This document shows, piece after piece, positions 1-32,252 of a stretch of DNA of 64,000 bases. The first letter of the stretch is position 1. Each line of letters starts with the position of its first letter. Where the stretch lies: positions 124,001 to 188,000 of the IMG/VR virus record IMGVR_UViG_3300031963_000006; one strand, given 5' to 3'. The notes under the pieces were generated by a model. The model searched no databases. It was not told the origin of the DNA and saw only the letters and a list, made by a program, of their open reading frames with translations. The position numbers were made by a program, and so were the translations under genes.

Positions 1-13
1 TGTTGATAGTACC

Positions 14-6012: not shown

Positions 6013-6026
6013 AACACAAAAAAAGG

Positions 6027-6034
6027 TATTTATA
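6027..6034 (+). promoter_or_regulatory. Putative phage late promoter TATTTATA
   Basis: Intergenic TATTTATA 26 nt before ATG 6061; same motif recurs before many genes. Confidence 0.55.
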
Positions 6035-6060
6035 ATAAAGTTTAATAATTTTCTAATAAA

Positions 6061-12904: not shown

Positions 12905-12905
12905 A

Positions 12906-15527
12906 ATGACGGCTTTTTGTGGTCTATATATAACATCTGAATGTTTTGGTCAAATTCAAGCATCTCAAGACGGGATGTATAATGGTAGACCTCAGTATTT
13001 CTTTTCAATAACTTACAATGGTAATTTAATTAATGGTTGGATTTATTGGAGTCCTGATGATAATAGTTGGTTTGTCCAAGATTTATCTACCAATCAAAAT
13101 ATAAGTTATTTACCATTCGATAGGGTTCATCCAAACGGAACTTATTTGGAATGGGAAAATGTTTCACTATTAAGTTATGGTTGTTTAACTAATTCAACAT
13201 CATTTGAAACTGATTGGTTTTCAGAATGTCCACCAACTTATTTTGAATTTTGTTGCCCCAAAGAAAGTCAACCTGAAAATTTTATTGGATTACAAAGTTT
13301 TGAATACTATGGTTACATTGATAGTGTTTTTTATTTAGAATCACCACAATTTAGTGGATGTGCAACGGTAATTGAAGGGCCAATACCTAGTAGTTCAGTT
13401 ATTTATAACTCAGTTGATTTAACAACCCAATACGATAGATGTAATACTTGTACTGGAAGCACACAACCCTGTTATTCACAACCAATTTATACAACACCAA
13501 CACCGATAAGTCCATTAACCGCTGATACAGGATGTGGAGTTAATTATGTTTTAGTTAACGAATGTCAAGTTATAACTGTAAGTCCATTGTCGGTTTTATG
13601 TTCTGTAACTAATGTGTCAACATATGGTGGGAATGACGGTTCGATAGAATTATTAATAAGTGGAGGAACTCCTCCATATACGATAAGTTGGGATAACGGG
13701 TATTCAACTCCAATTATCAATAATTTAATCTCAGGTTCCTATAGATACACGGTTACAGATTATTATGGTGATTTTACTGTTTCAAATGCATGTTCAGTTG
13801 GACAATTACCAATGCCGACACCGGTCCCAAATCCATCTAATTTCTGTTTAACAGTTAATATTGATGGTCAGATATTTAAGATTCAATTTGAACCTTTTTT
13901 ACCATATACAGGTGGAATACCGGCTTACAAGGGATATGATGCAAATGGAGAATGGGTATATGATTTAGTTTTTTATACCGATTCTTTAAGATGGATGTTA
14001 GACGGTCCTATAACTGCCGGTGACTTAGTTAACTATGACCCTAGTTATCCACCATTAAATGGTTGGGAATGGTTAAATCCTGGTATCGGGATTGCAAATG
14101 GTGTTGTTGGAGATTGTCAAAACAACGGTAATTTTTGTATGACGATTAATGTAGATTCTTTCGCAACACAGCCATATAAAATTTATTTTAATGAATATGG
14201 GGAAGCAAATGGTAAACCAATGTGGATTGACAATTTAGACCAATACCAAATCTCATGGAGTGAGAACTCACAAAATTCATCTTGGATTTTACAGGGATTA
14301 CCTGAGTACGCAACATTTACTTTAATTAATTCTAACCCATCAATTCCCCCCACAAATCAGTGGTTTGTTAATGGTAAAAATGGAGAGGCGATAATTACAT
14401 ATGATAATTGTTTTAGTTCTACTATTTGTGCTACTATTTCTGATTTATGTGAAACTGAAAGTATTGAATTAGTGTCAGGTGAATTAATTAATGGACAACA
14501 AAGTTGGTCAGGACAATTACCTTGTGGTAATGTCGGAACATGGTCTATATATTATGATAATGTGAATAATCAATGGGTTACAGATGGGTTGGATTCAGTT
14601 GCAACTAATGACGCTATAAATTATAATAATGTTTATTTGGGACCATTTGGTTATTACAACACTAATGGATACTATAATCTTTTTGTTACCGATGGAAATT
14701 GTAATTCACAAGGTAATCTAAAAATGGTTGTTACATATAATGACCCAATTTCAGATAGTGACGGGGGTATAGTTTTAGAAGTCGAAGGAGGTAATCCCCC
14801 ATATCAATATTCCATAGATAACGGAACAACGTATCAAAATTTTCCAATTTTTTCAAATTTAAAATTTGGAACTTATGTCGTTACAGTTAAGGATGTTAAT
14901 GGTTTAATAATTAAACAAAGTATAATATTACAAAAACCACCACAGATAGTAACATATGAGGTTTCTTTGAACACTACATCTAGACGAACAGTAAATACCG
15001 TCACTACGACAACTGTGGAATATACAACAACATTAAAAGTCACACCGCCATTACCTAGCGGTGTTACAATAAACTTTAATCTAACTCACAATGATGTTTA
15101 TAAAGTATCTCCTTCAGAATCGGCGTCTTCGTTAACCCTCGGAACAATATTATTGAAAAATAATGAAGAAATTTCAATTGATGATACTATAACAGGTAAT
15201 TATACTTACTCTAACACACTTTTATCTTGTCAGTCAAATTTAGTTTATGTTACTGCAACAACTAATGATTGGTATAATTTATCAGTTACATATGGTGATA
15301 ATATTATTATAACCACAACGGTTACTAATGTTAAGAATGGTAAATACCCTTGTTATCTTGCCGAAAATAACGAATTATATTCTTTATCAAACTTAAGAAT
15401 TAATGGGTGTAGTAACTGTAAAACGTCAAATCAGGATTCTCCACCACCTATAAGTCAAACACCAACTAAAACCCCAACACCAACTCCTACACCATCTAAA
15501 CCAGCGACTACATCACCAGGTATATAA
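12906..15527 (+). CDS. Cys-rich modular virion/fibre protein with SprB-like repeats
   Basis: Four FC/IC...NG(R/K/Q)..(Y/W) Trp-rich modules, two GG.PPY SprB-like repeats, short PT linkers, PT-rich C-terminus. Confidence 0.6.
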   Translation: MTAFCGLYITSECFGQIQASQDGMYNGRPQYFFSITYNGNLINGWIYWSPDDNSWFVQDLSTNQNISYLPFDRVHPNGTYLEWENVSLLSYGCLTNSTSFETDWFSECPPTYFEFCCPKESQPENFIGLQSFEYYGYIDSVFYLESPQFSGCATVIEGPIPSSSVIYNSVDLTTQYDRCNTCTGSTQPCYSQPIYTTPTPISPLTADTGCGVNYVLVNECQVITVSPLSVLCSVTNVSTYGGNDGSIELLISGGTPPYTISWDNGYSTPIINNLISGSYRYTVTDYYGDFTVSNACSVGQLPMPTPVPNPSNFCLTVNIDGQIFKIQFEPFLPYTGGIPAYKGYDANGEWVYDLVFYTDSLRWMLDGPITAGDLVNYDPSYPPLNGWEWLNPGIGIANGVVGDCQNNGNFCMTINVDSFATQPYKIYFNEYGEANGKPMWIDNLDQYQISWSENSQNSSWILQGLPEYATFTLINSNPSIPPTNQWFVNGKNGEAIITYDNCFSSTICATISDLCETESIELVSGELINGQQSWSGQLPCGNVGTWSIYYDNVNNQWVTDGLDSVATNDAINYNNVYLGPFGYYNTNGYYNLFVTDGNCNSQGNLKMVVTYNDPISDSDGGIVLEVEGGNPPYQYSIDNGTTYQNFPIFSNLKFGTYVVTVKDVNGLIIKQSIILQKPPQIVTYEVSLNTTSRRTVNTVTTTTVEYTTTLKVTPPLPSGVTINFNLTHNDVYKVSPSESASSLTLGTILLKNNEEISIDDTITGNYTYSNTLLSCQSNLVYVTATTNDWYNLSVTYGDNIIITTTVTNVKNGKYPCYLAENNELYSLSNLRINGCSNCKTSNQDSPPPISQTPTKTPTPTPTPSKPATTSPGI

Positions 15528-15541
15528 AAAAACAAATGGTA

Positions 15542-15549
15542 TATTTATA
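15542..15549 (+). promoter_or_regulatory. Putative late promoter TATTTATA
   Basis: Intergenic, 4 nt before ATG 15554. Confidence 0.5.
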
Positions 15550-15553
15550 AGAA

Positions 15554-17959: not shown

Positions 17960-17962
17960 TTT

Positions 17963-18586: not shown

Positions 18587-18616
18587 AACCACGTATTAAG
18601 TACGTGGTTTTTTTTT
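18587..18616 (+). terminator. Intrinsic terminator between convergent genes
   Basis: AACCACGTA-TTAAG-TACGTGGTT followed by a T run. Confidence 0.75.
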
Positions 18617-21600
18617 ATGGTGTTACGGACCAATTTCTACCGGCACTTGTTAAAGTTGTTTTACATGCTATTCCAGCGGGTGATGGACTTGAGTTTGGAT
18701 TAGCGGTACCAACAGCATTAGATAATGTTAATGTACCATTTGTTAAACTGGTGCTATTTGCCAAGTTACATAAAATAAAATCAACACTACTTTGATTCAA
18801 AGCGCAGTTTCCGGCAATAACTCTCTTTAAAGAAGTTGCACTTGCAAAAGAAATTGACCAATTTACAATAGGATTTATCGACATAGTTAATGCAGTTAAT
18901 GATGTTGGGAAAGTATTTCCTAATGGTAAAATGTTATATTGGTTATTTATTTGATTTGATGAAATATTTAAATCCGCAACTTGTATTGATGAACTAAAAT
19001 TAGTTATCGTTGTTATAAAATTATTACTTAAATTTAATGTGAAGTTAGATGCGGTGGACAAATAGCTCATATTAAACGTGGTTAAATTATTATTAGTTAA
19101 AGAAACTAATTTAACATTAGATGGAAAGTTTTGAGTCCACGATGATAAAGAAACACCGTTTAATAAAAATGTTTGTAGATTAGGGCTAGTCGTTAAAGTT
19201 TGAGTCCAAGTGGGGATAGTGTTTATGCCTCCTCCGACACTTCCAGTAACTGTGTTAGCGTTAAAATAAATTAAACTGGTTGGTAATGTCACAGGTAGAG
19301 AAGTTAAAGCGTTAGCTTCTAAATTTAAAGTTTGTATTGAATTCGGTAGAGGTGGTATAGTAGTTAATACGTTATAAGATAAATTTAAAGTTATTAATGA
19401 AGTACAAGATATTATTGTGTTAGTAAAAGTGTTTATTCTATTATTATTTAAATCAAGTGTTTGGAGTAAAGTATTTGAGGTTAAGTTTATTGTGAATGAT
19501 GATAAACCAAATAGTAATGGGTTACCTGTATCTCTATTTTGAACCATACTAATGGTCTTAACACTAGCGGGGAAGTTATAAGTCCATCCGGTTAATCTGT
19601 TTCTATCAAAATTCACATTCTCTAAGGTTGTACAACTTAATAAACCATTTGGAGCATCAAAAAACTTTAAATTATTTTGACCTGAAGAGTTATAAACCTG
19701 AAAATCTCTAAGACCTGGAGGAGGTATTAATGTGAAATTAACTAATTGAGTGTCCGCAAATAAAACGAAAAGTATATTAACACTAGTCCAAGATGATAAA
19801 TTATGACTAAAGTCTGTAAAATTACTATTCCAAATTTGGAAATTATTAATTCTAATTCTACTAGATAAATTAAATGAATTTAACTCTAAATTTGGATTGT
19901 TGTGGTTAAAAAATCCTATTCTTGTGAATACACTATTTACAACATCAATACCTGATAAATTAGAGAAAGTACAAAATTCAAATCTTAAATTAGATATTGA
20001 TGACCAACTATCAAATGTGCCTGGGTTATCTATTACTTTTGATATTCTTCTAAAAGTTATTGCACCAATTGTTCCTGATGTTTGAAAAATTCCGTTTAAT
20101 TGATAATCGGCAAATGTTGCGGTATATAACGCCGAATTATAAGTTTTACTTGTTGTGTGAGTGGTAGTATTTGGTAAATTAACACCAAAAGTTTGACCAT
20201 CACCCAAATCAACATAAAACTTTTTAGTTCCACTTCCAAAATCTTGTCTAACCTCCATTGGATTTGAACCGACCACATTTTGAACTTGCCAAAATGGGCT
20301 TGAACCTGTGAAACTTCTACCAATACATTGTGGTGATTGTGAGGCTCCTTTAACTCCGGTTACACCTATATTAAAAGTTGTTGTTGCTGTATATGGTGGG
20401 TCTGAATTTACATTGAAAACATCACCAGTACTTTGGTCGATAAAGTAAAATTCATTATTTATTTGATAAATAGCATTTGCGTCTGTAATATTTGGTGTTG
20501 GAGGGTTTGGGCAATTTGTGCATCCTATCTGTATCTCAGGGAAGTCTCTTAAATTAGTTATATAGTCATGTTGAGTAATATAGAAGAATGTAGGAGTACC
20601 TGGATTTGTTTGGGTAAATATAACTTTATTATTTGTGGTCAATAAAATATCACCAGTAACTGTATTTGGGGTGAGTAAACTTCCTGGTAAATTAAACATC
20701 GACACAAAACTTGAAGTATTATTAGGGAATGGGTTTAGAGTGATTTTAATAATTCTATTTGGATTAACCAAAGTTTCACTACCAATTAAAGTATTTGAAT
20801 TAACCGCAACTAAACCTTTGCCTAAGAATGAAATACCAGGAGGGAAACTTATATCCCTGAAAGAACCAACCGTAAATGGCGTTAATGAAGTTATTATCCA
20901 TTCTCTAATAAAAATATTACCAGAACCAGGGCCACCATATAGCCAAAGTTTACCTGTTTGAGAACCTGGGTCCCAGTAATGGGCAATATCCTCGGAATTG
21001 AAAAATCCTGGTATTATTATTTCAGATAGTGTATTACCAATTGGGTTAAAGTAATATATTTTTGTTGAGGTGTTGACCAAAATAAAACAATCATCTAAAA
21101 TAACTGGTGGTTGATATGGGTTAGTTGGAGTTGGGGTTGGAGTCGACGTATTTGTAGGGGTTTGAGTTTTAGTAGGGGTTTGACTTTGAGTTGGTGTTTG
21201 AGTTTGAGTTTTAGTAGGGGTTTGACTCTTAGTTGGAGTTGATGTTTGGGTCGGTGTTTGAGTTGATGTTTTTGTTGATGTTTGGGTTGATGTTTGGGTT
21301 TGGGTCGGTGTTTGTGTTGATGTATTTGTTGGAGTTTTAGTTTGCGTAGGGGTTTGAGTCTGTGTTGGAGTTGGGGTCGGAGTTGGAGTAGATACGGCAA
21401 AAACTTCAGTGACACAAGAATAAACACTTGCGGCGTCTGGTGGATTATACTGTAAAGGATTTGTGTAATATGTATTTACATCTCCTAAATAAGATATATT
21501 TAAAGGATTTGAAGCTTCAACTTGTACGATTCTACCTGTATAAGAAATTACATAATAAAATCCGTTCTCGTAGAATAAACCTTCGGCAGTTTCCATTATA

Positions 21601-23519
21601 GGATTAACACCCGATATTGGGAAAAAAGAAGTTATATCGACTAATGTTTCAATAACTCCTGTATAATAATCATACTGAACTAAAACTCTTTTTTGTTCCT
21701 CAATTGGTTCCATAGTACTGCAACCTAAAACGGCAATGAATTTTCTTGGAGTAGTGTCTGTTACTATAAAGTCATAAACAAAAATTCCTCTATTAGGGTT
21801 ACAAGGATTATCTGAAGTACCATATGGATTATTATTATTTCCAAAACCGGCGGTATAACTAAATCTTAATACCGCGGAAGAAGTGGCGTCCCCTAAATTA
21901 GGAATTGAACTTGGAGTTATCTCAAATACTTGATTTGGGAAAAACGCATTGTTGCCAACAAGAACTAACCTACTTAAACCTCCTTCATCAAAAGATGCGA
22001 ACCCTCTTTGGTGACCTATAGAACCATAATAAAATCTCTTACTAAATGTTGCAACAAATGGACAACGAGTATAATTAATTTCATTTATTATTATTCTAGC
22101 TGGTAAAACATCCAAAACTCTTTGTATTACCCATATTTTATTACTAGACATTGCAATATCAAATGCTGGGTAACCAAATTCATATGAGTTATCAGGTATT
22201 GGTAATTCTATTGTGGTTAACGAAGGTGCGTCAACGGCTATTATCCTAATAAAATAATTAGGGTCAGGTTGGAATGTTGAATTCCAAATACCTGTTCTAT
22301 AGATAGAAATACAATCACCAAGACAAAATGCCGTTGGAGTAGGTGTTTGAGTTTGTGTTGGAGTTTGAGTTCTAGTTTGTGTCCGTGTAGGAGTTTGGGT
22401 GTTAGTAGGGGTTTGACTCTTAGTTGGAGTTGATGTTTGGGTCGGTGTTTGAGTTGGTGTTTTAGTTTGAGTTGATGTTTGTGTTGGTGTTTGTGTTTGG
22501 GTAGGGGTTGGGGTAGGAGTTGGTGTTGAACATACAATAGAGTTACTCAACAGACAGGTAGGACAATCTGTTTGTAGAGTAATTGTATCGGTTATACCGT
22601 AATTATAATTGTTTAATGCTGTACTAATTGATGTTGTAAATGTTGCACAACCAGTATAACTTGAATTGGTTATGTAATAAACGTTGTTATTTACCAAACC
22701 TGTAAATATTATATTTGGTAAATTAAATATTTGAAAAGAATTATTTGGAGGGCAACAATCTAAGAAAAATGCGTTCTCAGGCGGATAACTAGTAGGTGTG
22801 GGTGTTGGTGTTTTAGTTTGAGTTGGTGTTTTAGTTTGAGTCGATGTTTGTGTAGGTGTTTGAGTTGATGTTTGAGTTGATGTTTGTGTAGGTGTTTGTG
22901 TAGGTGTTTGTGTTGATGTATTTGTGGGAGTATTAGTTTTAGTTGGTGTTGATGTTTGGGTTGATGTTTGGGTCGGTGTATTAGTTGGTGTACTGGTTTT
23001 AGTTGGAGTTTGAGTTTGAGTTGGAGTAGGTGAATTATTAGGAGTTGGGGTTGGAGTTGATGTTTGTGTTTGTGTTGGGGTTTTAGTTTGAGTATTAGTT
23101 GGAGTTGATGTTTGTGTTTGGGTTTTAGTTTGGGTGTTAGTAGGTGTCTGTGTTTGTGTTGGGGTTTTAGTTTGAGTTTGTGTTTGAGTATTGGTTGGAG
23201 TTTGTGTTTTAGTTTGAGTATTAGTAGGGGTCTGTGTTTGTGTTTGTGTTGATGTTTTTGTGGGTGTTTGTGTTTTTGTTGGAGTGGGTGTTTGTGTTTT
23301 TGTTGGAGTGGGAGTTGGAGTCGGGGGAAGTAGAGTAAAGTTACAACCTAAACCATAACCTTCAAAATAAACTTCATATGTACCATAGATATAATCCGCA
23401 GTATAGTAATACGGTATTAACTGAGGTCCAATATTTACAGTGCCACCTGTATAAGGATAAAATATAATATCACCTATTTGACCATTAAAATTATTGGAAC
23501 TTATTAAAACTGTTGGCAT
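18615..23519 (-). CDS. 1634-aa modular protein: Thr/Pro/Gln linkers, Cys module, two propeller-like domains, PKD-like segment, C-terminal leucine-rich repeats
   Basis: Three TPTQT linkers; LQTLDLNNNRI, LITLNLSYNVLTTIPPLPNSIQTLNLEANAL are LRRs; FYVDLGDG PKD-like. Confidence 0.75.
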   Translation of the reverse strand: MPTVLISSNNFNGQIGDIIFYPYTGGTVNIGPQLIPYYYTADYIYGTYEVYFEGYGLGCNFTLLPPTPTPTPTKTQTPTPTKTQTPTKTSTQTQTQTPTNTQTKTQTPTNTQTQTQTKTPTQTQTPTNTQTKTQTQTSTPTNTQTKTPTQTQTSTPTPTPNNSPTPTQTQTPTKTSTPTNTPTQTSTQTSTPTKTNTPTNTSTQTPTQTPTQTSTQTSTQTPTQTSTQTKTPTQTKTPTPTPTSYPPENAFFLDCCPPNNSFQIFNLPNIIFTGLVNNNVYYITNSSYTGCATFTTSISTALNNYNYGITDTITLQTDCPTCLLSNSIVCSTPTPTPTPTQTQTPTQTSTQTKTPTQTPTQTSTPTKSQTPTNTQTPTRTQTRTQTPTQTQTPTPTAFCLGDCISIYRTGIWNSTFQPDPNYFIRIIAVDAPSLTTIELPIPDNSYEFGYPAFDIAMSSNKIWVIQRVLDVLPARIIINEINYTRCPFVATFSKRFYYGSIGHQRGFASFDEGGLSRLVLVGNNAFFPNQVFEITPSSIPNLGDATSSAVLRFSYTAGFGNNNNPYGTSDNPCNPNRGIFVYDFIVTDTTPRKFIAVLGCSTMEPIEEQKRVLVQYDYYTGVIETLVDITSFFPISGVNPIMETAEGLFYENGFYYVISYTGRIVQVEASNPLNISYLGDVNTYYTNPLQYNPPDAASVYSCVTEVFAVSTPTPTPTPTQTQTPTQTKTPTNTSTQTPTQTQTSTQTSTKTSTQTPTQTSTPTKSQTPTKTQTQTPTQSQTPTKTQTPTNTSTPTPTPTNPYQPPVILDDCFILVNTSTKIYYFNPIGNTLSEIIIPGFFNSEDIAHYWDPGSQTGKLWLYGGPGSGNIFIREWIITSLTPFTVGSFRDISFPPGISFLGKGLVAVNSNTLIGSETLVNPNRIIKITLNPFPNNTSSFVSMFNLPGSLLTPNTVTGDILLTTNNKVIFTQTNPGTPTFFYITQHDYITNLRDFPEIQIGCTNCPNPPTPNITDANAIYQINNEFYFIDQSTGDVFNVNSDPPYTATTTFNIGVTGVKGASQSPQCIGRSFTGSSPFWQVQNVVGSNPMEVRQDFGSGTKKFYVDLGDGQTFGVNLPNTTTHTTSKTYNSALYTATFADYQLNGIFQTSGTIGAITFRRISKVIDNPGTFDSWSSISNLRFEFCTFSNLSGIDVVNSVFTRIGFFNHNNPNLELNSFNLSSRIRINNFQIWNSNFTDFSHNLSSWTSVNILFVLFADTQLVNFTLIPPPGLRDFQVYNSSGQNNLKFFDAPNGLLSCTTLENVNFDRNRLTGWTYNFPASVKTISMVQNRDTGNPLLFGLSSFTINLTSNTLLQTLDLNNNRINTFTNTIISCTSLITLNLSYNVLTTIPPLPNSIQTLNLEANALTSLPVTLPTSLIYFNANTVTGSVGGGINTIPTWTQTLTTSPNLQTFLLNGVSLSSWTQNFPSNVKLVSLTNNNLTTFNMSYLSTASNFTLNLSNNFITTITNFSSSIQVADLNISSNQINNQYNILPLGNTFPTSLTALTMSINPIVNWSISFASATSLKRVIAGNCALNQSSVDFILCNLANSTSLTNGTLTLSNAVGTANPNSSPSPAGIACKTTLTSAGRNWSVTP
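21211..21265. repeat. 55-bp exact direct repeat, copy 1
   Basis: ttagtaggggtttgactcttagttggagttgatgtttgggtcggtgtttgagttg, identical to 22402-22456. Confidence 0.9.
22402..22456. repeat. 55-bp exact direct repeat, copy 2
   Basis: Identical to 21211-21265; offset 1191 bp = 397 codons. Confidence 0.9.
22790..23330 (-). repeat. Low-complexity coding repeat ([12 protein letters not shown] linker)
   Basis: Degenerate 6-nt-period repeats encoding alternating Thr; boundaries approximate. Confidence 0.85.
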
Positions 23520-23534
23520 CTATACGTTTTGTAT

Positions 23535-23542
23535 TATAAATA
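23535..23542 (-). promoter_or_regulatory. Putative late promoter TATTTATA (minus strand)
   Basis: TATAAATA on + strand, 15 nt upstream of the minus-strand ATG at 23519. Confidence 0.55.
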
Positions 23543-23552
23543 CTTTATTTTT

Positions 23553-24821
23553 CTAATTACACTGATTTGATGTTATTGTAAGTCCCATTTGATAATAAGT
23601 TTGACCACTGCAATTCACCATATATGAATTAGTTGTACCTGTAACCGTTACAAATTGTATTGTTGTTGGGTCAACTAAATTTTTTAATGAACCGTCCCAA
23701 GCTTGAATACCTAATTCACTAGCCACATGGTCAATTCTACAGGCAAAACCAAAATTTCCTCCACCCGCAAAATTTAAACCAACAATTTTCCAAATTCCAC
23801 TAAAGTCGGCGATAAGAGCTGAACCTGAATCACCTCCAGCTATTGGGTTTAGACATAAAGATGATAAACTTGGGTCGTTTTCGGGTCTAACAAATGCTAT
23901 TAAATCTGAAAAATAAGCCGTGACAATATTACCTTGCATTTTATACCCACTAATTGGTTGAGTGGTGCCCAAAGAATAAACTCTTAAAGGACACGTTGGA
24001 GCTTGTTTTACGCCGGTTGTTCTTCCACTACTATATAGTATTGGATTTGTACTTAATAATAAATCAATTTCTGCGGTACTGGCAAATGGGATTGGAGTTG
24101 TGTTTCCTGTTAGTCCGTATTGTTTATAAGATTCGGTTAAACTTAAAATTGGAGTCCCACTTAATGATATTAGAGCACCATCTACTTTATTATTTGTTGT
24201 GAACCCCAAGTAAATTGGTACGTATCTTACTACTTGACCTATAATGTTTTGAGGAGGGCCCAAAGGACTTTCACCGGGTTGGTACGCTAAATCTACTTCT
24301 AATGAGCCGTTATCGTTTAAATTATATTCATTAAAAATAACTCCACCCAAATTTCTTTGTGTTGTGTAAAAAGCATCTTTTATTACCACATGATTATTTG
24401 TAACCCCCACTAAACTCTGTGTTGCAATATCTACGGCAACAAATCCCAAAGTACCAACAAACCCTAATTTACTTTTAGACGTTAAAGAAATGCCACCCTG
24501 AACTGGCCTGATATATAATCTATTAGGAGGAGGATTAGTTATCCAAAGATTACATTGAGGATTACAAGCTAATACCTCAATTTCACCAACTTCAACAACA
24601 TCCATAAAGTAAGTTTTATTATCGATAGTAATTGGTTCATTTGGTAAAATTTCCTCAGGAAATAAATTAGATAATTTTTTTTTCTCAGGTACAAAAAATA
24701 TTATGGATTCTTTTCTAGTATCAATACCATTTGATATTTTGAATCCATAACCAACACCTACATTATTTGGGGTTTTTAGGTTAAACTCCTCTATAATTTT
24801 TTTTAAATTTTCTGTTAACAT
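23553..24821 (-). CDS. Trypsin-like serine protease with Nal1-type N-terminal domain
   Basis: Intact triad TNNHV / VDGAL / GGDSGS; N-terminal VGVGYGFK...IIFFVPEKK...DVVEVG pattern as in Nal1-like proteases. Confidence 0.8.
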   Translation of the reverse strand: MLTENLKKIIEEFNLKTPNNVGVGYGFKISNGIDTRKESIIFFVPEKKKLSNLFPEEILPNEPITIDNKTYFMDVVEVGEIEVLACNPQCNLWITNPPPNRLYIRPVQGGISLTSKSKLGFVGTLGFVAVDIATQSLVGVTNNHVVIKDAFYTTQRNLGGVIFNEYNLNDNGSLEVDLAYQPGESPLGPPQNIIGQVVRYVPIYLGFTTNNKVDGALISLSGTPILSLTESYKQYGLTGNTTPIPFASTAEIDLLLSTNPILYSSGRTTGVKQAPTCPLRVYSLGTTQPISGYKMQGNIVTAYFSDLIAFVRPENDPSLSSLCLNPIAGGDSGSALIADFSGIWKIVGLNFAGGGNFGFACRIDHVASELGIQAWDGSLKNLVDPTTIQFVTVTGTTNSYMVNCSGQTYYQMGLTITSNQCN

Positions 24822-24826
24822 TTTTT

Positions 24827-27800
24827 CTAAAAAGGTTTTGAATTAAATTTAGTAAATATTGTGTTTATATTAGTTGGTATATTAGTAGGTGTTAAAGTTG
24901 GGGTAATTGTTGGAGTTGGTGAAGGAGGGTTTATGTTTACACAGTATAACCTAAAATTGTAATCTGCGGTTGATGTGTAACCGGACCCCAAAATTGTTGA
25001 TATTACTTTTACATATACTTCGGATGGGGAAGAAATGTTCTTCATAAAAGTTGAAAATCCTGTAGAACCTCCGGCAATTGGAGAACCATTTAAGTATTCT
25101 ACCCATGGACCATATAATAGAGCGTTATCAGACCTAAAACCAGTATCTATAACTATTTGGTTATTCCAATATACTATAAACCTATCAGGGTATGTATTAG
25201 CGCTAAATTCAAAGTAAACTTGACCTATTTGAGAGCCTAAATTGTATTTAAATAGGTTACTTCCCATGTTATTTGTAGGTGAAATTAGATTTCCGCAGTT
25301 AACCAAATAATCTTGATAACAATTTATTTTGGTCACGGCGTTTAACAATGGAACATTTACACCATTATTATAGTAGTATAAGTTTGACCACGAACTAATA
25401 GAAACCCCTATAGAATTCGGGGAGTTTGTATATGTTCCGGCCGATGAGAAGGCTGAAGTATATATATTACCATCACAACCTAAATATTGTAAATAAACCC
25501 TACCATTCCAAACAGGTACTGAATTTCCAACTGCATTGTCTAACATTTGTTGTGTTATGGTTACTTGCCAATTAAAACAACCATTATTACAATTATTTGG
25601 TGTTAAAGTTGGAGTTGGTGTAACAGGTATCGGGTTAAAACTAGAACAAACAATTTCCATCGTAGAACCCCCAAGAGGGCTACCGTCTGAATAATTAAAT
25701 GTTAAACTAGTATAAGGGTTTGGTGAGGAAATTTTATATTCACCACCACCAGTACCAGGTTCTGGTAATGTTGCAATAGTGTTACCTGAAATTTCTTGAT
25801 AACACCATGGACCAACTAAAGTTATTGTAACCGGACCTGAATCACTCGTCACTACAAAAGTTTCTCTACTTGACCAACCAATAAAGTCAGACATAGTTAT
25901 TCTGAAAACTAAATTATTCATTGGTTCACTAAAATTCAGTGTGTATAATGTTGGAGTACATTCAATTGGACCACCTGGAGGGTTCTCTCTACAACCTATC
26001 CATACAGTATCTGAGTTTTCGTATACACAACTAGTGTGAGTCCATAATTGTTCCGCATAACCACTACCAGTGGCTGTTATTAATATCCCGTAATAATTTA
26101 CATAACCACCAATAACAGGTAATTTACCTACACAACCAACTGGGGTTTGTGTTGGTGTTGGAGTTGGGGCGATATTATAACAATAGTTTTGACGTGTAAA
26201 GGCAGAATTTACATAAATTGTAAAATTATTTTGAGTATAATAAACTTGCGGAGTTCCACCTAAAGGGACACCTGATAAATTAGGATAATTATTATAAACT
26301 CCTGAACTAGTATAATTTTGAATTTTTTGTAATCCATCACATCCTACCCATCTTACATAAATAAGTCCATTAATAATTGGATTAGTATTACCAGATGCAC
26401 TTAAAATATATTCCTCTAATATATTTACCGTCCAAGCAAAACAATTTTGACAATTATCTCCATTAGTAGGCGTTATTGTTGGTGTTAATGTTGGTGTTGG
26501 TGTTAGAGTTGTATCTATAATCTCAACAACTAAAATATCACATTCAGGGTCCGGAGTCGGAGTCGGGGTTGGCGTAGGAGTTTCGGTTGGGGGAGGGCTC
26601 TTTTCTGGTGTTAATGAAGGTGTTTGTGTTTGTGTTGGTGTTTGTGTTTGTGTTGGTGTTTGGGTTGATGTAGGAGTTTGACTTTTTGTAGGAGTTTGAC
26701 TGTTTGTTGGAGTTTGAGTCTGGGTATTTGTAGGTGTGTTAGTTGATGTTTTTGTTGGTGTTTGTGTTTTAGTTTGAGTTGGAGTGTTGGTTGGAGTCTG
26801 ACTCTGAGTTGGGGTATTTGTCGGAGTTTGAGTTTGTGTGTTGGTTGGTGTCGGAGTTGGAGTTTCTGATACTTCAGGTGTTCGTGTAGGAGTTTTAGTT
26901 TGGGTTTGAGTTTGGGTTTGAGTTGGAGTATTGGTTGGTGTTTGTGTTGATGTTGGTGTTTGTGTTTGGGTATTAGTTGGTGTTTGAGTTGATGTTTTTG
27001 TTGGTGTCTTAGTTGGTGTTTGAGTCTTAGTTGGAGTTTGTGTTTGAGTAGATGTTTTTGTTTGAGTTGGGGTGGATGTTTTAGTCGGAGTATTACTCAG
27101 AGTTGGATTTGGAGTTGGTGTTTGCGTAGGTGTTTCAGTCGGTGTTTGAGTTGACGTAGGAGTTTGAGTTTTTGTTGGTGTAGGGGTTTTTGTTGATGTT
27201 TTTGTTGGGGTTGGAGTTGGTGTTTCTGTGGATGTATTAGTTGGCGTATTTGTTGGAGTTTTAGTTGATGTTCTTGTTGGTGTTGGGCTATCAGTTGGTT
27301 GTGGTGTTGGGGTTGGAGTACTTGTTGATGTTGGAGTTTCAGTTTTAGTTGGAGTTGGAGTTTTAGTATTAGTTGGAGTTTTTGTTGAAGTTTTTGTAGG
27401 GGTTACTGTTGGCGTCGAAGTTTTAGTTGGAGTTTTAGTTTGAGTTGGACTTATTGTGTTTGTTGGGGTATTAGTTTGAGTCGGAGTCTGAGTTTTAGTT
27501 GGAGTTTTAGTTTGAGTTCTGGTTTGAGTTTGTGTTTTAGTTTGTGTTGGGGTTTGAGTTACGTCAGGAGTCGGAGTTTGTGTTTGAGTCGATGTTTTAG
27601 TTGGAGTTTTGGTGGGTGTTTGTGTTCTAGTTTCAGTTCGTGTTTGTGTTTGTGTTATTGTATTTGTGGGAGTATTTGTTGGGGTTTGAGTTGTTGTTGG
27701 GGTTTGAGTATTAGTTCTTGTTGGAGTTCTTGTTGGAGTTTTTGTAACACAAAATGTTTGAGTTGGAGTTGGTGTTGGTAAATCGTTATTGGTAGGTGTT

Positions 27801-28498
27801 TGAGTTTTAGTTGTGGTAACAGTTGGAGTTACGGTATTTTGAGGAGTTTTTGTTTGAGTTCTAGTCTTTGTAGGTGTTTGAGTCCTTGTTGTTGTATTTG
27901 TAGGAGTTTTCGTTGGAGTTGGAGTTTTTGTAGGAGTTTTTGTTTGAGTCTGAGTTTTTGTTGGAGTTTTTGTTTGAGTTTGAGTTATGGTCGGAGTTTG
28001 TGTTACGGCTCCTGGAGCTCCTCCTGGACAACAATAAGATGTTGTTGAACATTCTGCATTAGGCAATAAAAATTCCGTAAAATTTGTAGGGTAATCCTCG
28101 GTACTAAAAGAAATATCCTGAACTAAACCACAAAAAGTGTATTCAACTAAATTAATAGGGTCCAAACAATTTGATAAACATATTGTAATACGCCATAAAT
28201 CAAAAGGTTGTGTGTTGGTACCTAAGGTGACATATCTATTAATACCAGCACAACAATCGTATACCTCGAAAACGTCTTGAGGGATAAATGATTTAAAATT
28301 TTGACAATCGGAAGCAACTAATTTTACCCCTACTTCAGGAGAATTTTCATAAGGGTAGGGTACTGTGATATCTATTGGTTTTGATGTGTAAGTAATAACT
28401 CTTGAAACAAATACACAATTTTCACCATTTGGTTCACAAACATAAATGTCATAAGGTGCCGTTAAACCTGATATGTCTGTTATTTTAACTGTTGCCAT
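24827..28498 (-). CDS. 1223-aa mucin-like modular protein (about 500-aa Thr/Pro/Gln stalk, duplicated Cys domain)
   Basis: N-terminal PYDIYVC module, long TPT stalk, two C..CF.W.V.I...NG..Y....GCDG repeats. Confidence 0.75.
26470..28010 (-). repeat. About 1.5-kb low-complexity coding repeat (Thr-X dipeptides)
   Basis: Extreme G+T skew on + strand; encodes ([10 protein letters not shown])n; boundaries approximate. Confidence 0.9.
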
Positions 28499-31047
28499 TA
28501 GTTACATAAAATTGTTGAATTACAAATATTATTTATAGTACCTTGACTGAATGATGACTGACAAGCCTCAATTACTACCGCACCTGTGACAGGGGTATTA
28601 GATTGTCGACAGAAGCAAGCGGCTCCAGCAATCCCTGCTCCACCTGGTACGGTAATTTGTGCGGGATTTCCATCACAATCAGTATAAAACGCAGTTCCTT
28701 GAAAACCTGATATAGTCCTAACTGCAGTACATTGACATGTTATGGATGATGGGTTTGGGCCTCCATCTGGAGTATTGCCATTATTACCACCTGACCCGCC
28801 AGAACCACCGGTTCCATTAGGGTTTGATGGTGAAGTACCATTTTCAGGATTACACGGCCAAAGATTGACAATGACACAATTTGAAAGCTCGACTATAGTG
28901 TATATATTAAGGATAAATGACCTAATATAATAAAAACCATCTCCATAACAATTACAATTTGCTTGGTTAAGATACGCGTAACTTCCGACCTCTAATGATT
29001 CTAAATAAATCGGTTGACTAGAAACACCCCAACTATCAATAACATTATTACTTAAATCCTCAACTAAAGAATATATAATATCACAAATTTCAGTTTCAGA
29101 TTGAGGCCAATTAATATTGGGTCCATTATTAAATTTATATGCGAATGAGAAAGGATAACTTGTTAAGTTTGATGGAGGGTTACATTCGGTTTCTGAAATA
29201 CATTGAGCACAATTTGTGTATATTGTTGAAGAAACTTCAGTAAAGTAATTTCCTTGGTAAACTATGATGTCGTCTGTAGTATTTTGTGGTATTGTTGTTG
29301 AAGAACCGTTGTATTGCCAACAAGTATTAGTAGTTAAGTTAAATATTGTTTGAGTACCTATAGTTGTTAACGAAGGTTCGGTTTGATAAACTATTGTTTG
29401 AGGTCCATTAGTATCATTACAAAGTCTGTATTTGTAATACGTTGTTGGGGTAAATTCAAATGATACGTTATTACAACTTATACTATTAGAAGCCCCGTAA
29501 ATATTAATACTTGGTGATGTAATTACCGTTACTGTATACGGAGGAGATGTTTCAATATTATAAACTATAGCGTTATTGTCTGTAACATATATTAAACCAT
29601 TTTCTACAAAAATAGAAGTTGGCGTTAATATTGTTGGAGATATTAAAATTTCAACCTCAGGGTCTCCATCTGGATAAGAATATTGTGATAAGTAAGTATT
29701 ATCACCTTCTCTTGAAAGTATTAAAATTTTGTTATTAGTGGTTGCCAATAAATCCCCCGCAAACAGCCTTCCTGGTGGTAAACTAAATAATTCATTATAA
29801 TTTAAATTACTTAATGAAGTTTGACCCGCTGAAGGTAAATATATTTCAAATACTGTTTGAGGTGATAAACCAACTTGAACATTACATGTTAACAACTTGT
29901 TATTATTAATTGCAAAAAGTCCGGCACCAAATGTAACGTTAGATTCTGTGTCATTTAACTCCCTAACAAATGTTGCAGAGAATGGGTTTAAAACAATATC
30001 CCATTCTTTAATTTTATCTGTTGTTGATATGAATAATTTTGTTTGAGTATTTCCAATATCATTCCAATTTGATAAATTTGGAATAGTTAGTGATGTTGTG
30101 GTATTAGTATCTACAACATATGTATACACCCCTCCTTCTCCGATTATAAATGTAGGACATAAATTCAATATTGACGGAGATGAAGGTGTCATTGTCATTG
30201 TAGGTGTTGGAGTTGGGGTAAGTTGAACTGCGCACAATGAACATTGACCTAAATTAGAATAACCAATTGGCCCACTCGATAATGTAATGTTATTAGTACC
30301 AATATAAGTTGAATTATTACCTATGTATGTTATACATCTTTCGTTCCCATCCACAACTCCTAAGAAAATCATAAATTGGGATAAATCACCACCTGAAGGG
30401 TTATTTACCACATTTGTGGTATAATACATAAATCCGTTATTACAATCTTGGAATTGTTTACTAACAGGACAATTTATAACAGAATCTATGGTGACAAAAG
30501 TAACGTCACCTGAAAAATTACACTGAATTTGATTACTCCTATTTCTATAAATCATTATTGTTGGAGTCATTGTTGGTGTCGGAGTCATAGTAGGGGTTAT
30601 TCCTGTTATATAAGCATCGACATAAATATTGGGACAGAAATTTGATGACGTAGGGGTGTTTGTCATTGTTGGAGTGTAAGAAGGGGTATAAGACGGTGTT
30701 GGAGTTGGTGGAATATCAATTAGTGTTGCCTCAAAATTGAAGACATCACAATTAACAGTTGGTGTAGGAGTAGGGGTCAAACAAACTGACGAGTTTACAT
30801 ACTCAAAAGTTAAATCAGGGCATACTCCGTTATATGGGTATTTTCCCTGTAAAAAACAAGGACTACCACCTAAAGTCGTTGCTAAACACCAAAAACCACC
30901 AGAGTCGTAAAATATATAATATCCGTTAGTTGAACCAACATAATAATCTCTTAAATTGTATACACCTGATTGGGTATATACATCATCATAGGCCGGAAAT
31001 CCAGTACCACTTACACAATAATCATCATTTGCACAATATACGGCCAT
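28498..31047 (-). CDS. 849-aa Cys-rich modular protein with PT linkers and propeller-like domain
   Basis: TPTPTMT linkers; [18 protein letters not shown]...[11 protein letters not shown]...PPYTV domain; Gly-rich C-terminal linker. Confidence 0.7.
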
Positions 31048-31048
31048 A

Positions 31049-31264
31049 TTATAACGTTAAATTTGTTGTAACTTCACAACCTATTGAGTCTACAATTTTT
31101 AGAGTAAATTCAGAAAAGTTTAACATTATTGTGGGAATCTCAAATGTATATGGTGCCGAGTCAGTTCTGTCTATATAAATGCATTGTGTTTGAGGGTTGT
31201 CACATATATAAATGTCATATGGTGTTGTTCCTGAAAGGTCGTTAATTGTAACTACAGTTGGCAT
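31049..31264 (-). CDS. 71-aa stand-alone module homologous to the N-terminus of the 24827-28498 ORF
   Basis: VTINDLSGTTPYDIYICD...CIYI...LKIVDSIGC vs [19 protein letters not shown]...CVFV...VKLVASDC. Confidence 0.75.
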   Translation of the reverse strand: MPTVVTINDLSGTTPYDIYICDNPQTQCIYIDRTDSAPYTFEIPTIMLNFSEFTLKIVDSIGCEVTTNLTL

Positions 31265-31281
31265 TAGTAAATTTTATTTCA

Positions 31282-31288
31282 ATAAATA
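31282..31288 (-). promoter_or_regulatory. Putative late promoter TATTTAT for the inverted island
   Basis: ATAAATA on + strand, 17 nt upstream of minus-strand ATG 31264. Confidence 0.5.
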
Positions 31289-31348
31289 TAATACTGACCC
31301 AAAACTTGTGAAGTTGACATGAACTAATTTGTACCTTATTTTTACCTG

Positions 31349-32251: not shown

Positions 32252-32252
32252 T

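What the first reader, a model, noticed from the sequence alone, without database searches (positions are those of the whole stretch)
18615..31264. Inverted 12.7-kb island of mix-and-match mucin-like fibre proteins with a dedicated protease
Seen: five co-oriented minus-strand genes between ruvC and primase, headed by TATTTAT motifs (31282, 23535). Three very large proteins are built from small Cys-rich modules joined by Thr-Pro-Gln/Lys linkers up to about 500 aa long, carrying variable domains (propeller-like, LRR, PKD-like). They sit with a 71-aa free module and an intact trypsin-like protease. None has a signal peptide. Inference: a late-expressed virion 'brush' of long flexible stalks presenting alternative binding domains, possibly matured by or carrying the protease. 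This architecture resembles cellulosome or mucin design more than classic trimeric tail fibres.
Basis: partly seen in the sequence, partly recalled or inferred. Interest (0 to 1): 0.75.

Follow-up and report, generated by a model that had tools for sequence, protein, structure and literature searches.

The report
Phage mucin-like modular adhesin gene island
A 320-kb freshwater phage carries a fast-evolving block of genes for long proteins, in which binding domains are strung on strictly alternating threonine stalks, and it also encodes an enzyme of the kind that puts sugars on such stalks, so it probably builds mucin-like sticky fibres; nobody has yet seen them on the particle.

Summary
Five co-oriented minus-strand genes (71, 849, 1223, 422 and 1634 aa) lie between ruvC and primase. 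They form two units, each headed by TATTTAT, and end at a hairpin terminator.

The large proteins are modular:
- NHL/YWTD-type six-bladed propellers
- a 560-aa LRR region
- several small Cys-rich modules

These are joined by strictly alternating (Thr-X)n stalks of up to 490 aa.

The host genome is a complete 321-kb T4-like jumbo myophage from lakes, probably infecting Bacteroidota.

Among about 80 relatives the ruvC-primase gap runs from 38 bp to 12.7 kb, with 55 gene and module patterns. Only the 71-aa gene and one module pair persist. The same modules recur in a 28-kb second locus, in a head-adjacent gene and in tail-fibre-module genes.

- The phage encodes a GT60-type polypeptide GlcNAc-transferase and sugar-nucleotide enzymes. 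In 32 of 47 related loci that transferase sits directly behind a (Thr-X)n gene, so real mucin-type glycosylation is plausible.
- The protease is NAL1-like and intact, but accessory. It is absent from the closest complete relative, and in other phages it is itself tethered by such a linker. It is cargo, not a dedicated maturase.

Virion location is inferred, not shown.

The parts
31282..31288 (-). TATTTAT promoter-like motif heading the first unit (71-aa gene, p849, p1223, protease)
   Evidence: It lies 24 nt before the ATG. The motif is 9-15 times enriched upstream of ORFs genome-wide.
31049..31264 (-). p71: free-standing 71-aa module with three invariant Cys; SprB-repeat-like, probably Ig-like
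   Evidence: Alignment A4. The profile finds 904 cluster representatives. Single-copy matches almost always start at Met1, and multi-copy matches are SprB-repeat adhesins. It is the first island gene in nearly all relatives.
28498..31047 (-). p849: seven folded blocks, in order an N-terminal Cys module (aa 3-107), a second beta module (169-275), a propeller and three C-terminal modules, joined by short Thr/Pro linkers
   Evidence: AlphaFold2 model, mean pLDDT 75.6, folded blocks at 80-95. 460 homologues, most sharing only the first 270 aa or so. Its start lies 1 nt after the p71 stop.
29443..30174 (-). Six-bladed NHL/YWTD-type beta-propeller of p849 (aa 292-535)
   Evidence: Profile A3 against PDB: Pizza6/PknD propellers, E 1.5e-9. 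Foldseek: LRP6/LDLR, E 1e-7. VIA Z up to 15.5, including the phage phi11 receptor-binding protein at Z 13.8.
24827..28498 (-). p1223: p71-type N-terminal module, Cys module, 490-aa (Thr-X)n stalk, then four small C-terminal domains (one type present twice)
   Evidence: The start overlaps the p849 stop by 1 nt.
26537..28006 (-). (Thr-X)n stalk of p1223 (aa 165-654); about 150 nm if fully extended (inference)
   Evidence: 46% Thr, 18% Pro; Thr at 91% of alternate positions. The DNA is only a degenerate repeat, 57-89% matches. Independent metagenome contigs match it exactly.
23553..24821 (-). NAL1-like chymotrypsin-fold serine protease; triad H144 (24390-24392), D214 (24180-24182), S332 (23826-23828)
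   Evidence: PHROG 20754 'protease', E 7e-14. At least 986 homologues. Invariant triad. Model pLDDT 85, pTM 0.90. Best solved match is rice NAL1 over about 400 columns, E 4e-14.
23536..23542 (-). TATTTAT motif heading the second unit (p1634)
   Evidence: It lies 23 nt before the ATG, in the 33-nt gap after the protease gene.
18615..23519 (-). p1634: N-terminal module (aa 1-64), stalk (62-244), Cys module (245-330), stalk (331-397), propeller 1 (398-712), stalk (708-801), propeller 2 (806-1075), LRR region (1076-1634)
   Evidence: Its C-terminal 824 aa are 33% identical to a 1765-aa paralogue in the second locus.
18618..20294 (-). Leucine-rich-repeat region of p1634
   Evidence: Pfam LRR_8 E 8e-6 and LRR_4 E 3e-5, both just below the curated cut-off. 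phmmer against PDB finds Leptospira LRR proteins at 1.4e-8 and SHOC-2 at 9e-7.
18587..18609 (.). Hairpin terminator shared by the converging ruvC and p1634 transcripts
   Evidence: 10-bp stem followed by a T run on the plus strand, and scored on both strands.
10043..12904 (+). Outside the finding: 953-aa protein of the baseplate/fibre module, with SprB repeats and a C-terminal propeller (12185-12901) of the same family as the island's
   Evidence: Pfam SprB, E 6.5e-18. Propeller HMM, E 5e-25. Residues 198-402 match the distal part of the Wac whisker of RB16/RB43-type phages, E 1e-5.
12906..15527 (+). Outside the finding: 873-aa fibre-module protein with SprB repeats, the island's Cys module (aa 105-189), a weak copy of the p849 N-module and a Thr/Pro tail

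Best explanation
**What it is.** The island is one of at least three loci in this jumbo myophage that encode a family of modular adhesins, most likely displayed on the virion.

**Design of each large protein**
- A small N-terminal module. In the p71 family it always starts at Met1 and is kept while the rest varies, so it is probably the part that docks the protein to the particle or to a partner.
- One or more strictly alternating (Thr-X)n stalks of 67-490 residues.
- Distal ligand-binding heads: six-bladed propellers, an LRR solenoid and small disulfide-rich beta modules.

**How it is made (inferred).**
- The genes are transcribed as two units from the phage's own TATTTAT promoters.
- The proteins are made in the cytoplasm without signal peptides.
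- The stalk threonines are O-glycosylated there by the phage's GT60-type polypeptide GlcNAc-transferase, and extended by its other glycosyltransferases using phage-made sugar nucleotides.
- This would give stiff, protease-resistant, mucin-like bottle-brush stalks.
- The proteins leave the cell with the virion at lysis.

**What it does (inferred).** The heads give multivalent, rapidly re-assortable binding to host-surface or particle ligands. This accounts for the extreme module shuffling between relatives.

**The protease.** It is one more exchangeable head or cargo, not a maturase. It is a NAL1-like serine protease that other phages tether by the same linker and Cys module, possibly to cut host surface proteins.

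**Shown:** gene structure, module homologies and folds, hypervariability, the promoter motif class, presence and linkage of the glycosylation genes, and exact matches in RNA libraries.

**Inferred:** virion location, the docking role of the N-modules, glycosylation, ligands and protease substrate.
For: **Modules**
- They are of extracellular-adhesin types. The propeller matches PknD/YWTD/NHL folds and the propeller of the phage phi11 receptor-binding protein.
- LRR matches.
- The p71 profile hits type-IX-secreted (Por_Secre_tail sorting domain) adhesins with 28 SprB repeats.
- Other p71-headed proteins carry LRR_5, DUF285 or concanavalin-like lectin domains.
- The p71 module sits at Met1 in almost all single-copy hits among the best 150 of 904.

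**Sharing with structural genes**
- The island's modules recur in the plus-strand baseplate/fibre module just upstream (953- and 873-aa proteins) and in a 1324-aa gene beside the head genes.
- The 953-aa protein matches the distal part of annotated Wac whiskers.
- The genome is a T4-like myovirus with sheath, baseplate wedge, portal and gp23-like capsid genes.

**Variability**
- 55 island patterns in 80 loci, with a gap of 38 bp to 12.7 kb.
- In a relative whose primase is 98% identical, the island proteins are 47-64% identical.

**Promoter class**
- TATTTAT heads the sheath, adaptor, portal, baseplate and fibre operons as well as both island units.
- The host-like TATATTTG(TA) class occurs only among small genes at 160-300 kb.

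**Glycosylation**
- PF11397 (GT60) at 189 bits in the complete genome, and in 0 of 14 control cellular genomes.
- Kept in 4 of 5 relatives and in 140 viral contigs at 69-79% identity.
- In 32 of 47 distinct loci the co-oriented ORF ending within 300 nt upstream of GT60 carries a (Thr-X)n linker. (Thr-X) residues per 10 kb are 199 around GT60 against 8.3 on the replication side of primase.
- The genome also has GDP-mannose 4,6-dehydratase (E 9e-116), a DegT-type aminotransferase (E 1e-72), GT2 enzymes and an HtrL_YibB protein.
- In a distant phage the protease homologue lies between modular proteins and GT60, GT25 and HtrL_YibB genes.

**Other**
- No signal peptides or membrane segments.
- Lake metatranscriptome contigs match p1223 and p849 exactly at seven places, and none match the adjacent primase/exonuclease stretch.
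Against: - There is no direct evidence that any of these proteins is in the virion. No cultured relative carries them, so no proteomics exists.
- No match to any tail-fibre, Hoc or decoration family.
- TATTTAT also precedes non-structural genes, so it does not prove late expression. No gp55-like late sigma factor was found.
- The RNA evidence is seven short contigs in two runs, without strand information, and DNA carry-over cannot be excluded.
- In this genome GT60 is 80 kb from the island and follows a tail-fibre-like gene rather than a (Thr-X)n gene. Its acceptor is untested.
- The sugar genes could instead serve DNA or host-envelope modification.
- NAL1, the protease's nearest solved relative, is an intracellular enzyme.
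- Many cysteines would stay reduced in the cytoplasm, so folding before lysis is unexplained.
Confidence: 0.55

Rival explanations
1. They are conventional host-range determinants: receptor-binding tail fibres or whiskers anchored at the baseplate or collar. They are an extension of the adjacent fibre module, not a general surface brush, and the stalks merely replace coiled-coil or beta-helical shafts.
For: - The island directly follows the baseplate/fibre module, where T4-like phages have gp10-12 and wac.
- Modules are shared with the 953- and 873-aa fibre-module proteins, and the 953-aa protein matches Wac whiskers.
- In five relatives without an island, the p71 and p849-N genes lie on the plus strand inside the structural module.
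- p849 homologues have a conserved first 270 aa and a variable remainder, as receptor-binding proteins do.
- There is a propeller precedent in the phi11 receptor-binding protein.
Against: - No tail-fibre family match and no trimerisation or shaft motif.
- The p849 N-module is C-terminal or internal in some relatives, so it is not a fixed anchor.
- Similar proteins lie beside the head genes and in a separate 28-kb locus.
- Sixteen proteins carrying 2,907 linker residues are far more than a baseplate needs.
Confidence: 0.22
2. They are capsid decoration proteins, functionally like Hoc. They adhere to environmental polymers, particles or algal or animal mucus rather than to the host receptor, and so raise the encounter rate.
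For: - The p71 module is weakly Ig-like: Kre9_KNH Ig-like hits in 18 of 43 members, plus SprB-repeat kinship.
- A free 71-aa copy could fill capsid sites.
- A propeller and Thr/Pro-linker protein lies directly after the capsid and prohead-protease genes.
- Known precedent, from my own knowledge: Ig-like phage decorations binding mucin glycans.
Against: - No homology to Hoc or to any known decoration family.
- The island adjoins tail genes, not head genes.
- Nothing links the p71 module to the capsid protein.
Confidence: 0.12
3. The products are not virion components. They are soluble or intracellular accessory proteins: decoys released at lysis, condensate-forming disordered proteins, or, in the case of the protease, an anti-defence or host-takeover enzyme. 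In this view the island is a cargo hotspot at the junction of two transcription blocks.
For: - The locus sits at a strand-switch junction, which is typical of accessory hotspots.
- The protease is accessory, and its nearest solved relative, NAL1, is intracellular.
- AlphaFold DB neighbours include proteases fused to conflict-type domains such as SLATT and ankyrin.
- No signal peptides.
- TATTTAT is not restricted to structural genes.
Against: - The domain repertoire (propellers, LRR, SprB-like and disulfide-rich modules, Thr/Pro stalks) is that of extracellular adhesins and is shared with fibre-module proteins.
- No PADLOC match.
- Protease homologues are tethered by the same linker to the same Cys module as the large proteins.
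Confidence: 0.1

Closest known systems
Glycosylated mycobacteriophage virions (Freeman et al. 2023, Cell Host Microbe; cited in PMC12619734)
   Same: Phage-encoded glycosyltransferases act in the bacterial cytoplasm on Ser/Thr-rich extensions of virion proteins.
   Different: - There the targets are short C-terminal tails of the capsid and tail-tube subunits, and the glycosylation is experimentally shown.
- Here the candidate targets are 67-490-residue (Thr-X)n stalks inside separate modular adhesins.
- The initiating enzyme here is a GT60/PF11397-type transferase.
- Nothing here is shown biochemically.
Mimivirus surface fibrils and chlorovirus glycoproteins (my own knowledge)
   Same: A large virus carries its own sugar-nucleotide synthesis and glycosyltransferases, and uses them to coat particle-surface proteins independently of any host secretory pathway. 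Compare the GDP-mannose dehydratase and aminotransferase here.
   Different: - Those are eukaryotic viruses, with unrelated fibril proteins and no (Thr-X)n stalks.
- No sequence homology was found here.
Eukaryotic GT60 substrates: Dictyostelium spore-coat and PsA Pro/Thr repeats, Trypanosoma cruzi mucins (my own knowledge)
   Same: Thr/Pro-rich repeats receive alpha-GlcNAc on Thr from GT60-family polypeptide GlcNAc-transferases. Pfam PF11397 is the same family as the phage enzyme.
   Different: - Those enzymes act in the Golgi, or on Skp1 hydroxyproline in the cytoplasm.
- The phage enzyme's acceptor and donor are unknown.
T4-type Wac whiskers, Hoc and other Ig-like phage decorations
   Same: - Accessory, non-essential virion appendages with Ig-like or repeat domains that modulate adsorption.
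- The neighbouring 953-aa protein matches the distal part of RB16/RB43 Wac.
   Different: - Wac is a trimeric coiled coil, and Hoc is four Ig domains.
- The island proteins have neither, and match no such family.
Staphylococcus phage phi11 receptor-binding protein Gp45 (PDB 5efv)
   Same: A beta-propeller used as the ligand-binding platform of a phage host-recognition device (VIA Z 13.8).
   Different: Fold similarity only (7% identity). The phi11 propeller has five blades in a trimeric baseplate protein (my own knowledge); here there are six blades on a flexible stalk.
Bacteroidota SprB-type gliding adhesins and cellulosome-like scaffolds
   Same: - Long surface proteins built from many small repeat modules.
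- SprB repeats occur in the phage's fibre-module proteins, and the p71 module is related to them.
- Thr/Pro linkers join the modules, as in glycoside-hydrolase and cellulosome systems.
   Different: - No Sec signal and no type-IX C-terminal sorting domain.
- No cohesin or dockerin.
- The p71-type Met1 module was not found in 185,579 species genomes.
Rice NARROW LEAF 1 (NAL1) serine protease
   Same: Whole-length fold match including the N-terminal domain (E 4e-14, about 400 columns). H-D-S triad in the same order.
   Different: - 17% identity, and the Pfam NAL1_N score of 20.5 is below the cut-off of 27.
- The phage family has an extra C-terminal Cys-pair segment and, in relatives, linker-tethered modules.
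- It is essentially confined to viral and metagenomic sequences.

Membership tests
Phage tail fibre / receptor-binding protein families | Sequence match to a curated tail-fibre or tail-spike family | tested here: not met
   No such PHROG or Pfam hit for any island protein. The only hits are unknown-function PHROGs on linker or LRR parts.
Phage tail fibre / receptor-binding protein families | Conserved proximal anchor with a variable distal part across relatives | tested here: inconclusive
   - Met: most of 460 p849 homologues share only the first 31% or so, and the p71 module is always at Met1.
- Against: the p849 N-module is internal or C-terminal in some relatives.
Phage tail fibre / receptor-binding protein families | Presence in the virion | not testable with these tools
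   Uncultured phage. No homologues in 50,697 cultured-phage records.
Mucin-type O-glycoproteins | Long Pro/Thr/Ser-rich repeat domains | tested here: met
   Stalks of 67-490 aa, 46-48% Thr and 17-19% Pro, strictly alternating.
Mucin-type O-glycoproteins | A polypeptide-initiating glycosyltransferase available to the protein | tested here: met
   PF11397 (GT60) at 189 bits in the same genome. In 32 of 47 related loci it lies immediately downstream of (Thr-X)n genes.
Mucin-type O-glycoproteins | Dense O-glycans actually attached | not testable with these tools
   Needs mass spectrometry or lectin assays.
Mucin-type O-glycoproteins | Passage through a secretory pathway | tested here: not met
   No signal peptide or membrane segment. 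Any glycosylation must be cytoplasmic.
NHL/YWTD-type six-bladed beta-propeller | Six repeated four-stranded blades, with profile and fold match | tested here: met
   Profile hit to Pizza6/PknD, E 1.5e-9. Model pLDDT above 90 for residues 291-530. Foldseek and VIA matches.
Leucine-rich repeat proteins | LRR consensus repeats | tested here: met
   Pfam LRR_8 and LRR_4 are just under the curated cut-off (25.9 and 24.4 against 27 bits), but 81 PDB LRR chains match, the best at 1.4e-8.
SprB repeat (PF13573) | Match of the p71 module to the Pfam model | tested here: inconclusive
   - No direct Pfam hit for p71.
- The p71 profile nevertheless matches multi-repeat SprB adhesins, for example one with 28 SprB repeats.
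- So it is related to the family, but not a member by the curated model.
NAL1-like / PA-clan serine proteases | Chymotrypsin double-barrel fold with His-Asp-Ser in order | tested here: met
   H144, D214 and S332 are invariant. Fold matches to NAL1 and alpha-lytic protease.
NAL1-like / PA-clan serine proteases | NAL1 N-terminal domain (PF25608) above the curated cut-off | tested here: not met
   20.5 bits against a cut-off of 27. The structural alignment still covers that domain.
Cellulosome (cohesin-dockerin) systems | Cohesin and dockerin modules | tested here: not met
   No Pfam hit. The resemblance is limited to linkers joining modules.
Anti-phage defence or counter-defence systems | Match to PADLOC models | tested here: not met
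   None for any of the five proteins.

The most novel reading that the evidence does not exclude
This lineage of freshwater jumbo phages makes true mucin-like glycoproteins inside a bacterial cell. A phage GT60 polypeptide GlcNAc-transferase, helped by phage-made unusual sugars, would densely O-glycosylate strictly alternating (Thr-X)n stalks up to about 150 nm long. These stalks carry shuffled binding and enzymatic heads, including a tethered NAL1-like protease, and clothe the virion in a bottle-brush coat. That would be a bacterial-virus counterpart of mimivirus fibrils, and the first mucin-type O-glycosylation system described for a phage.
Probability: 0.33. Interest if true: 0.85.

Novelty: new variant of a known kind. 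Interest (0 to 1): 0.7.

Why it matters
- If the stalks are glycosylated and virion-borne, phages would join giant eukaryotic viruses in building their own glycoprotein coat, using an enzyme family (GT60) otherwise known from protist mucins.
- That would change how adsorption, particle stickiness, grazing resistance and immune or defence recognition of large aquatic phages are thought about.
- The system is abundant: hundreds of homologues, present in many lake metagenomes from 2019 to 2025.
- It offers a natural toolkit: strictly periodic (Thr-X)n spacers, a cytoplasmic polypeptide glycosyltransferase, and a large unannotated virus-specific protease family.
- The central claim can be tested directly with recombinant proteins, without culturing the phage.

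Tried and rejected
- **Cultured-phage searches.** A near-identity DNA search of 20 kb found nothing. tblastn of the protease, p849 and the p1634 C-terminal half also found nothing, so no annotated or proteomically characterised relative is available.
- **ESM Atlas, p1223 C-terminal part.** Best score 0.74 and no structure, so it is only a weak lead towards adhesin or CBM-like domains.
- **Duplicated p1223 domain.** A PDB profile search gave no hits. The 'PKD-like' label is therefore left unverified.
- **Relation between N-terminal modules.** hhalign of the p71 family against the p1634 N-module and against the 953-aa protein's N-terminus showed no relation. There are therefore at least two N-terminal module families, not one.
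- **Late sigma factor.** T4 gp55 used as a query on the complete genome gave no hit, which is not conclusive.
- **Sigma-70 consensus scan.** Not enriched (64 found, 52 expected), so it is uninformative for this organism.
- **PADLOC.** No hits.
- **Species genomes.** The p71 module was not found, and the protease gave one remote Halomonas hit. This gave no host clue, but shows that both families are essentially viral.
- **Whole-model fold searches of p849.** They returned only propeller matches. The small modules could not be searched separately.
- **Recent microsatellite expansion or assembly collapse of the linkers.** Rejected. The DNA repeats are degenerate, and independent contigs match exactly.
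- **Host-derived secreted adhesin (moron).** Rejected. There is no signal peptide and no type-IX sorting domain.
- **Literature.** No paper in the library links GT60 or Thr-rich mucin-like proteins to phages. The 'moraphage' paper notes four core glycosyltransferase groups in aquatic Bacteroidota jumbo phages. Whether this phage belongs to that lineage was not established.

Full report
**1. What is there**

The window holds five co-oriented minus-strand ORFs at exactly the stated coordinates:

| Name | Window coordinates | Length |
|---|---|---|
| p71 | 31049-31264 | 71 aa |
| p849 | 28498-31047 | 849 aa |
| p1223 | 24827-28498 | 1223 aa |
| protease | 23553-24821 | 422 aa |
| p1634 | 18615-23519 | 1634 aa |

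- The flanks are a RuvC-like resolvase and a DnaG-type primase, both on the plus strand.
- The first four genes are tightly packed, with a 1-nt gap, a 1-nt overlap and a 5-nt gap. A 33-nt gap carrying TATTTAT precedes p1634.
- A hairpin terminator at 18587-18609 closes the converging transcripts.
- None of the five proteins has a signal peptide or membrane segment by hydropathy.

**2. The genome**

- The window is part of a 126.8-kb viral contig. That contig is collinear with a complete 321,403-bp genome with direct terminal repeats.
- It is a T4-like jumbo myovirus. It has a tail sheath, a baseplate wedge and a head-tail adaptor, a portal, a gp23-type major head protein and a prohead protease.
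- Its nearest cultured relatives by capsid protein are a Microcystis phage and a Flavobacterium phage, at about 41-42% identity.
- Window 1-17959 continues the baseplate/fibre module. It includes two large proteins with SprB repeats.
- A second upstream motif, TATATTTG(TA), resembles the Bacteroidota -7 promoter element (my own knowledge). It is 7-14 times enriched before small genes at 160-300 kb.
- Together with the SprB repeats, this points to a Bacteroidota host. That is an inference.
- The phage occurs with near-identical sequence in at least 18 freshwater metagenome runs, dated 2019-2025.

**3. The promoter motif**

- TATTTAT is not enriched in the window overall.
- It is strongly enriched and positioned upstream of ORFs.
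- It heads the sheath, adaptor, portal, baseplate and fibre operons as well as both island units. It also heads a DnaB helicase and many small genes.
- It is therefore the phage's own promoter class, distinct from the host-like class. It is not proof of late timing.
- A gp55-type sigma factor was not found.

**4. Anatomy of the proteins**

*Stalks*
- The stalks are strictly dipeptide-periodic. Thr occupies 91-96% of alternate positions and 0-1% of the others. X is Pro, Gln, Lys, Ser or Asn.
- At DNA level they are only degenerate repeats.
- Independent assemblies reproduce them exactly.

*Folded parts*
- Iterated HMMs over the genome and about 80 related loci define the modules.
- Six-bladed propeller: two in p1634 and one in p849. 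The profile matches Pizza6/PknD at E 1.5e-9. The p849 model has pLDDT above 90 there. Fold matches are to YWTD, NHL and Kelch propellers and to the phi11 receptor-binding protein.
- LRR region of about 560 aa in p1634.
- Cys module of about 80 aa.
- Several small beta modules without known relatives.
- N-terminal modules of two unrelated types.

*The p71 type*
- It is the free 71-aa protein and also the first 70 residues of p1223.
- Its profile finds 904 cluster representatives among 1.84 billion. In single-copy hits it begins at Met1, in proteins of 70-907 aa.
- Multi-copy hits are SprB-repeat adhesins of Bacteroidota type.
- Cargo domains behind it elsewhere are LRR_5, DUF285 and a concanavalin-like lectin.
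- It was not found in 185,579 species genomes.

**5. Mix and match, and variability**

Within the same genome the island's modules recur in four places:
- a 28-kb plus-strand locus at 29-57 kb, with proteins of 1152, 848, 1097, 592, 672, 2305, 1765 and 403 aa
- a 1324-aa gene after the head genes
- a 703-aa gene
- the fibre-module proteins of 953 and 873 aa

In all, 16 proteins carry 2,907 linker residues containing 1,310 Thr.

Across 80 primase-anchored relatives:
- The ruvC-primase gap ranges from 38 bp (no island) to 12.7 kb.
- I count 55 distinct gene-length and module patterns.
- p71 followed by a protein with the two p849 N-modules is the constant core, yet even that pair changes position within proteins.
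- Some island proteins are almost pure stalk, for example 1750 aa with 1189 linker residues.
- In the relative whose primase is 98% identical, the island proteins are only 47-64% identical.
- In several relatives the ruvC block is inverted to the other side of the replication genes.

**6. The protease**

- The family has at least 986 metagenomic members and no Pfam annotation.
- It has an invariant H-D-S triad and conserved cysteines.
- The model is confident (pLDDT 85, pTM 0.90).
- Its best solved neighbour over the whole length is rice NAL1, followed by alpha-lytic protease.
- It is accessory. It is absent from five relatives, one of them complete at 322 kb and the others 59-89% complete. 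It is present in only one other island, at a different position. It is essentially absent from cellular genomes and cultured phages.
- Longer homologues continue into a beta domain, a Thr/Pro linker and the same Cys module found in the large proteins, or into a Fib_succ_major domain.
- In a distant phage it lies between modular proteins, one with a propeller, and GT60, GT25 and HtrL_YibB genes.
- I conclude that it is another exchangeable head or cargo of the same system, not a maturase of it.

**7. Glycosylation lead**

- The complete genome encodes a PF11397 (GT60) glycosyltransferase at 189 bits. The family is absent from 14 control cellular genomes. The gene matches PHROG 24687 at E 9e-164.
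- It also encodes an HtrL_YibB/methyltransferase protein, GT2 enzymes, GDP-mannose 4,6-dehydratase and a DegT-type aminotransferase.
- GT60 is kept in 4 of 5 relatives and in 140 viral contigs at 69-79% identity. That is far more conserved than the island.
- In 32 of 47 distinct loci the co-oriented gene ending within 300 nt upstream carries a (Thr-X)n stalk. In 38 of 47 there is one within 5 kb.
- The density of such residues is 199 per 10 kb around GT60 and 298 on the island side of primase. On the replication side it is 8.3.
- GT60 enzymes are known to place GlcNAc on Thr of Pro/Thr repeats in protists (my own knowledge).
- Cytoplasmic O-glycosylation of the stalks is therefore a specific and testable inference.
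- The same transferase occurs in Xanthomonas and Stenotrophomonas jumbo phages, beside other sugar-modifying genes.

**8. Virion association**

The evidence is indirect:
- The domain repertoire is of extracellular-adhesin type.
- Modules are shared with the fibre module. Its 953-aa member matches the distal part of annotated Wac whiskers in RB16/RB43-type phages, in the syntenic gp10-12-wac position.
- The promoter class is shared with structural operons.
- The hypervariability is typical of host-interaction genes.
- RNA-library contigs match p1223 and p849 exactly, while the adjoining primase/exonuclease stretch has none.

There are no proteomic, imaging or timing data, and the site of attachment (tail, collar or head) is open.

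**9. Verdict**

- The 'dedicated protease' and the 'late' meaning of TATTTAT are not supported as stated.
- The mucin analogy gains an unexpected mechanistic basis from the GT60 linkage.
- Nothing comparable was found in the searchable literature.
- I rate it a new variant of known kinds (phage adhesin appendages and virion glycosylation), with a one-in-three chance of being the first phage mucin-type glycoprotein system.

Noticed in passing
Complete genome of the same phage (handle G001) 29167-56867, plus strand; outside the window: A second and larger locus (28 kb, eight genes of 403-2305 aa) of the same (Thr-X)n-linked modular proteins, headed by TATTTAT. One member (1765 aa) is 33% identical to the C-terminal 824 aa of p1634.
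   Followed up: partly
G001 63077-64327 (GT60), 69040-71409 (HtrL_YibB plus methyltransferase), and 12908-13711, 16357-17334, 17331-18485, 22482-23897 on the minus strand: A sizeable glycan toolkit: a PF11397 polypeptide GlcNAc-transferase, GT2 enzymes, GDP-mannose 4,6-dehydratase and a DegT-type aminotransferase. This suggests synthesis of an unusual amino-deoxy sugar.
   Followed up: partly
Window about 51040-51084, 62830-62870 and 63300-63339, and 20 more sites at G001 160-300 kb: A second conserved upstream motif, TATATTTG(TA), resembling the Bacteroidota -7 promoter element. It occurs only before small genes outside the structural blocks, and probably marks the host-polymerase (early) class.
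   Followed up: partly
G000:C1:118958-122702 (beyond the window's right end), minus strand: A tandem array of about eight paralogous genes of roughly 100 aa (33-58% identical to each other), several each preceded by TATTTAT exactly 12 nt before the start. Function unknown.
   Followed up: no
Loci L007-L010 (relatives with primase 93% identical): The ruvC gene and the 801-aa structural gene lie inverted downstream of the exonuclease instead of upstream of the island. The junction is therefore a rearrangement hotspot.
   Followed up: no
Window 10043-12904 (+): Residues 198-402 of the 953-aa SprB-repeat protein match the C-terminal part of the enlarged Wac whisker of RB16/RB43-type coliphages. 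This hints that such repeat modules are exchanged among very distant T4-like phages.
   Followed up: partly
G001 122-571 (+), at the genome terminus: A 149-aa ORF that is almost entirely Thr/Pro linker (124 of 149 residues). It may be a fragment or a free stalk peptide.
   Followed up: no
Runs X1-X18; window 26500-32400: The phage genotype, including the repetitive stalk DNA, is reproduced without a single difference in contigs from different studies and years (2019-2025), although the island is hypervariable between related lineages.
   Followed up: partly
L043 (1750-aa ORF), L137 (1797 aa), L130 (1618 aa): Relatives encode proteins that are 68-85% strictly alternating (Thr-X)n, up to 1,533 such residues in one ORF. 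That is far beyond any linker role.
   Followed up: no
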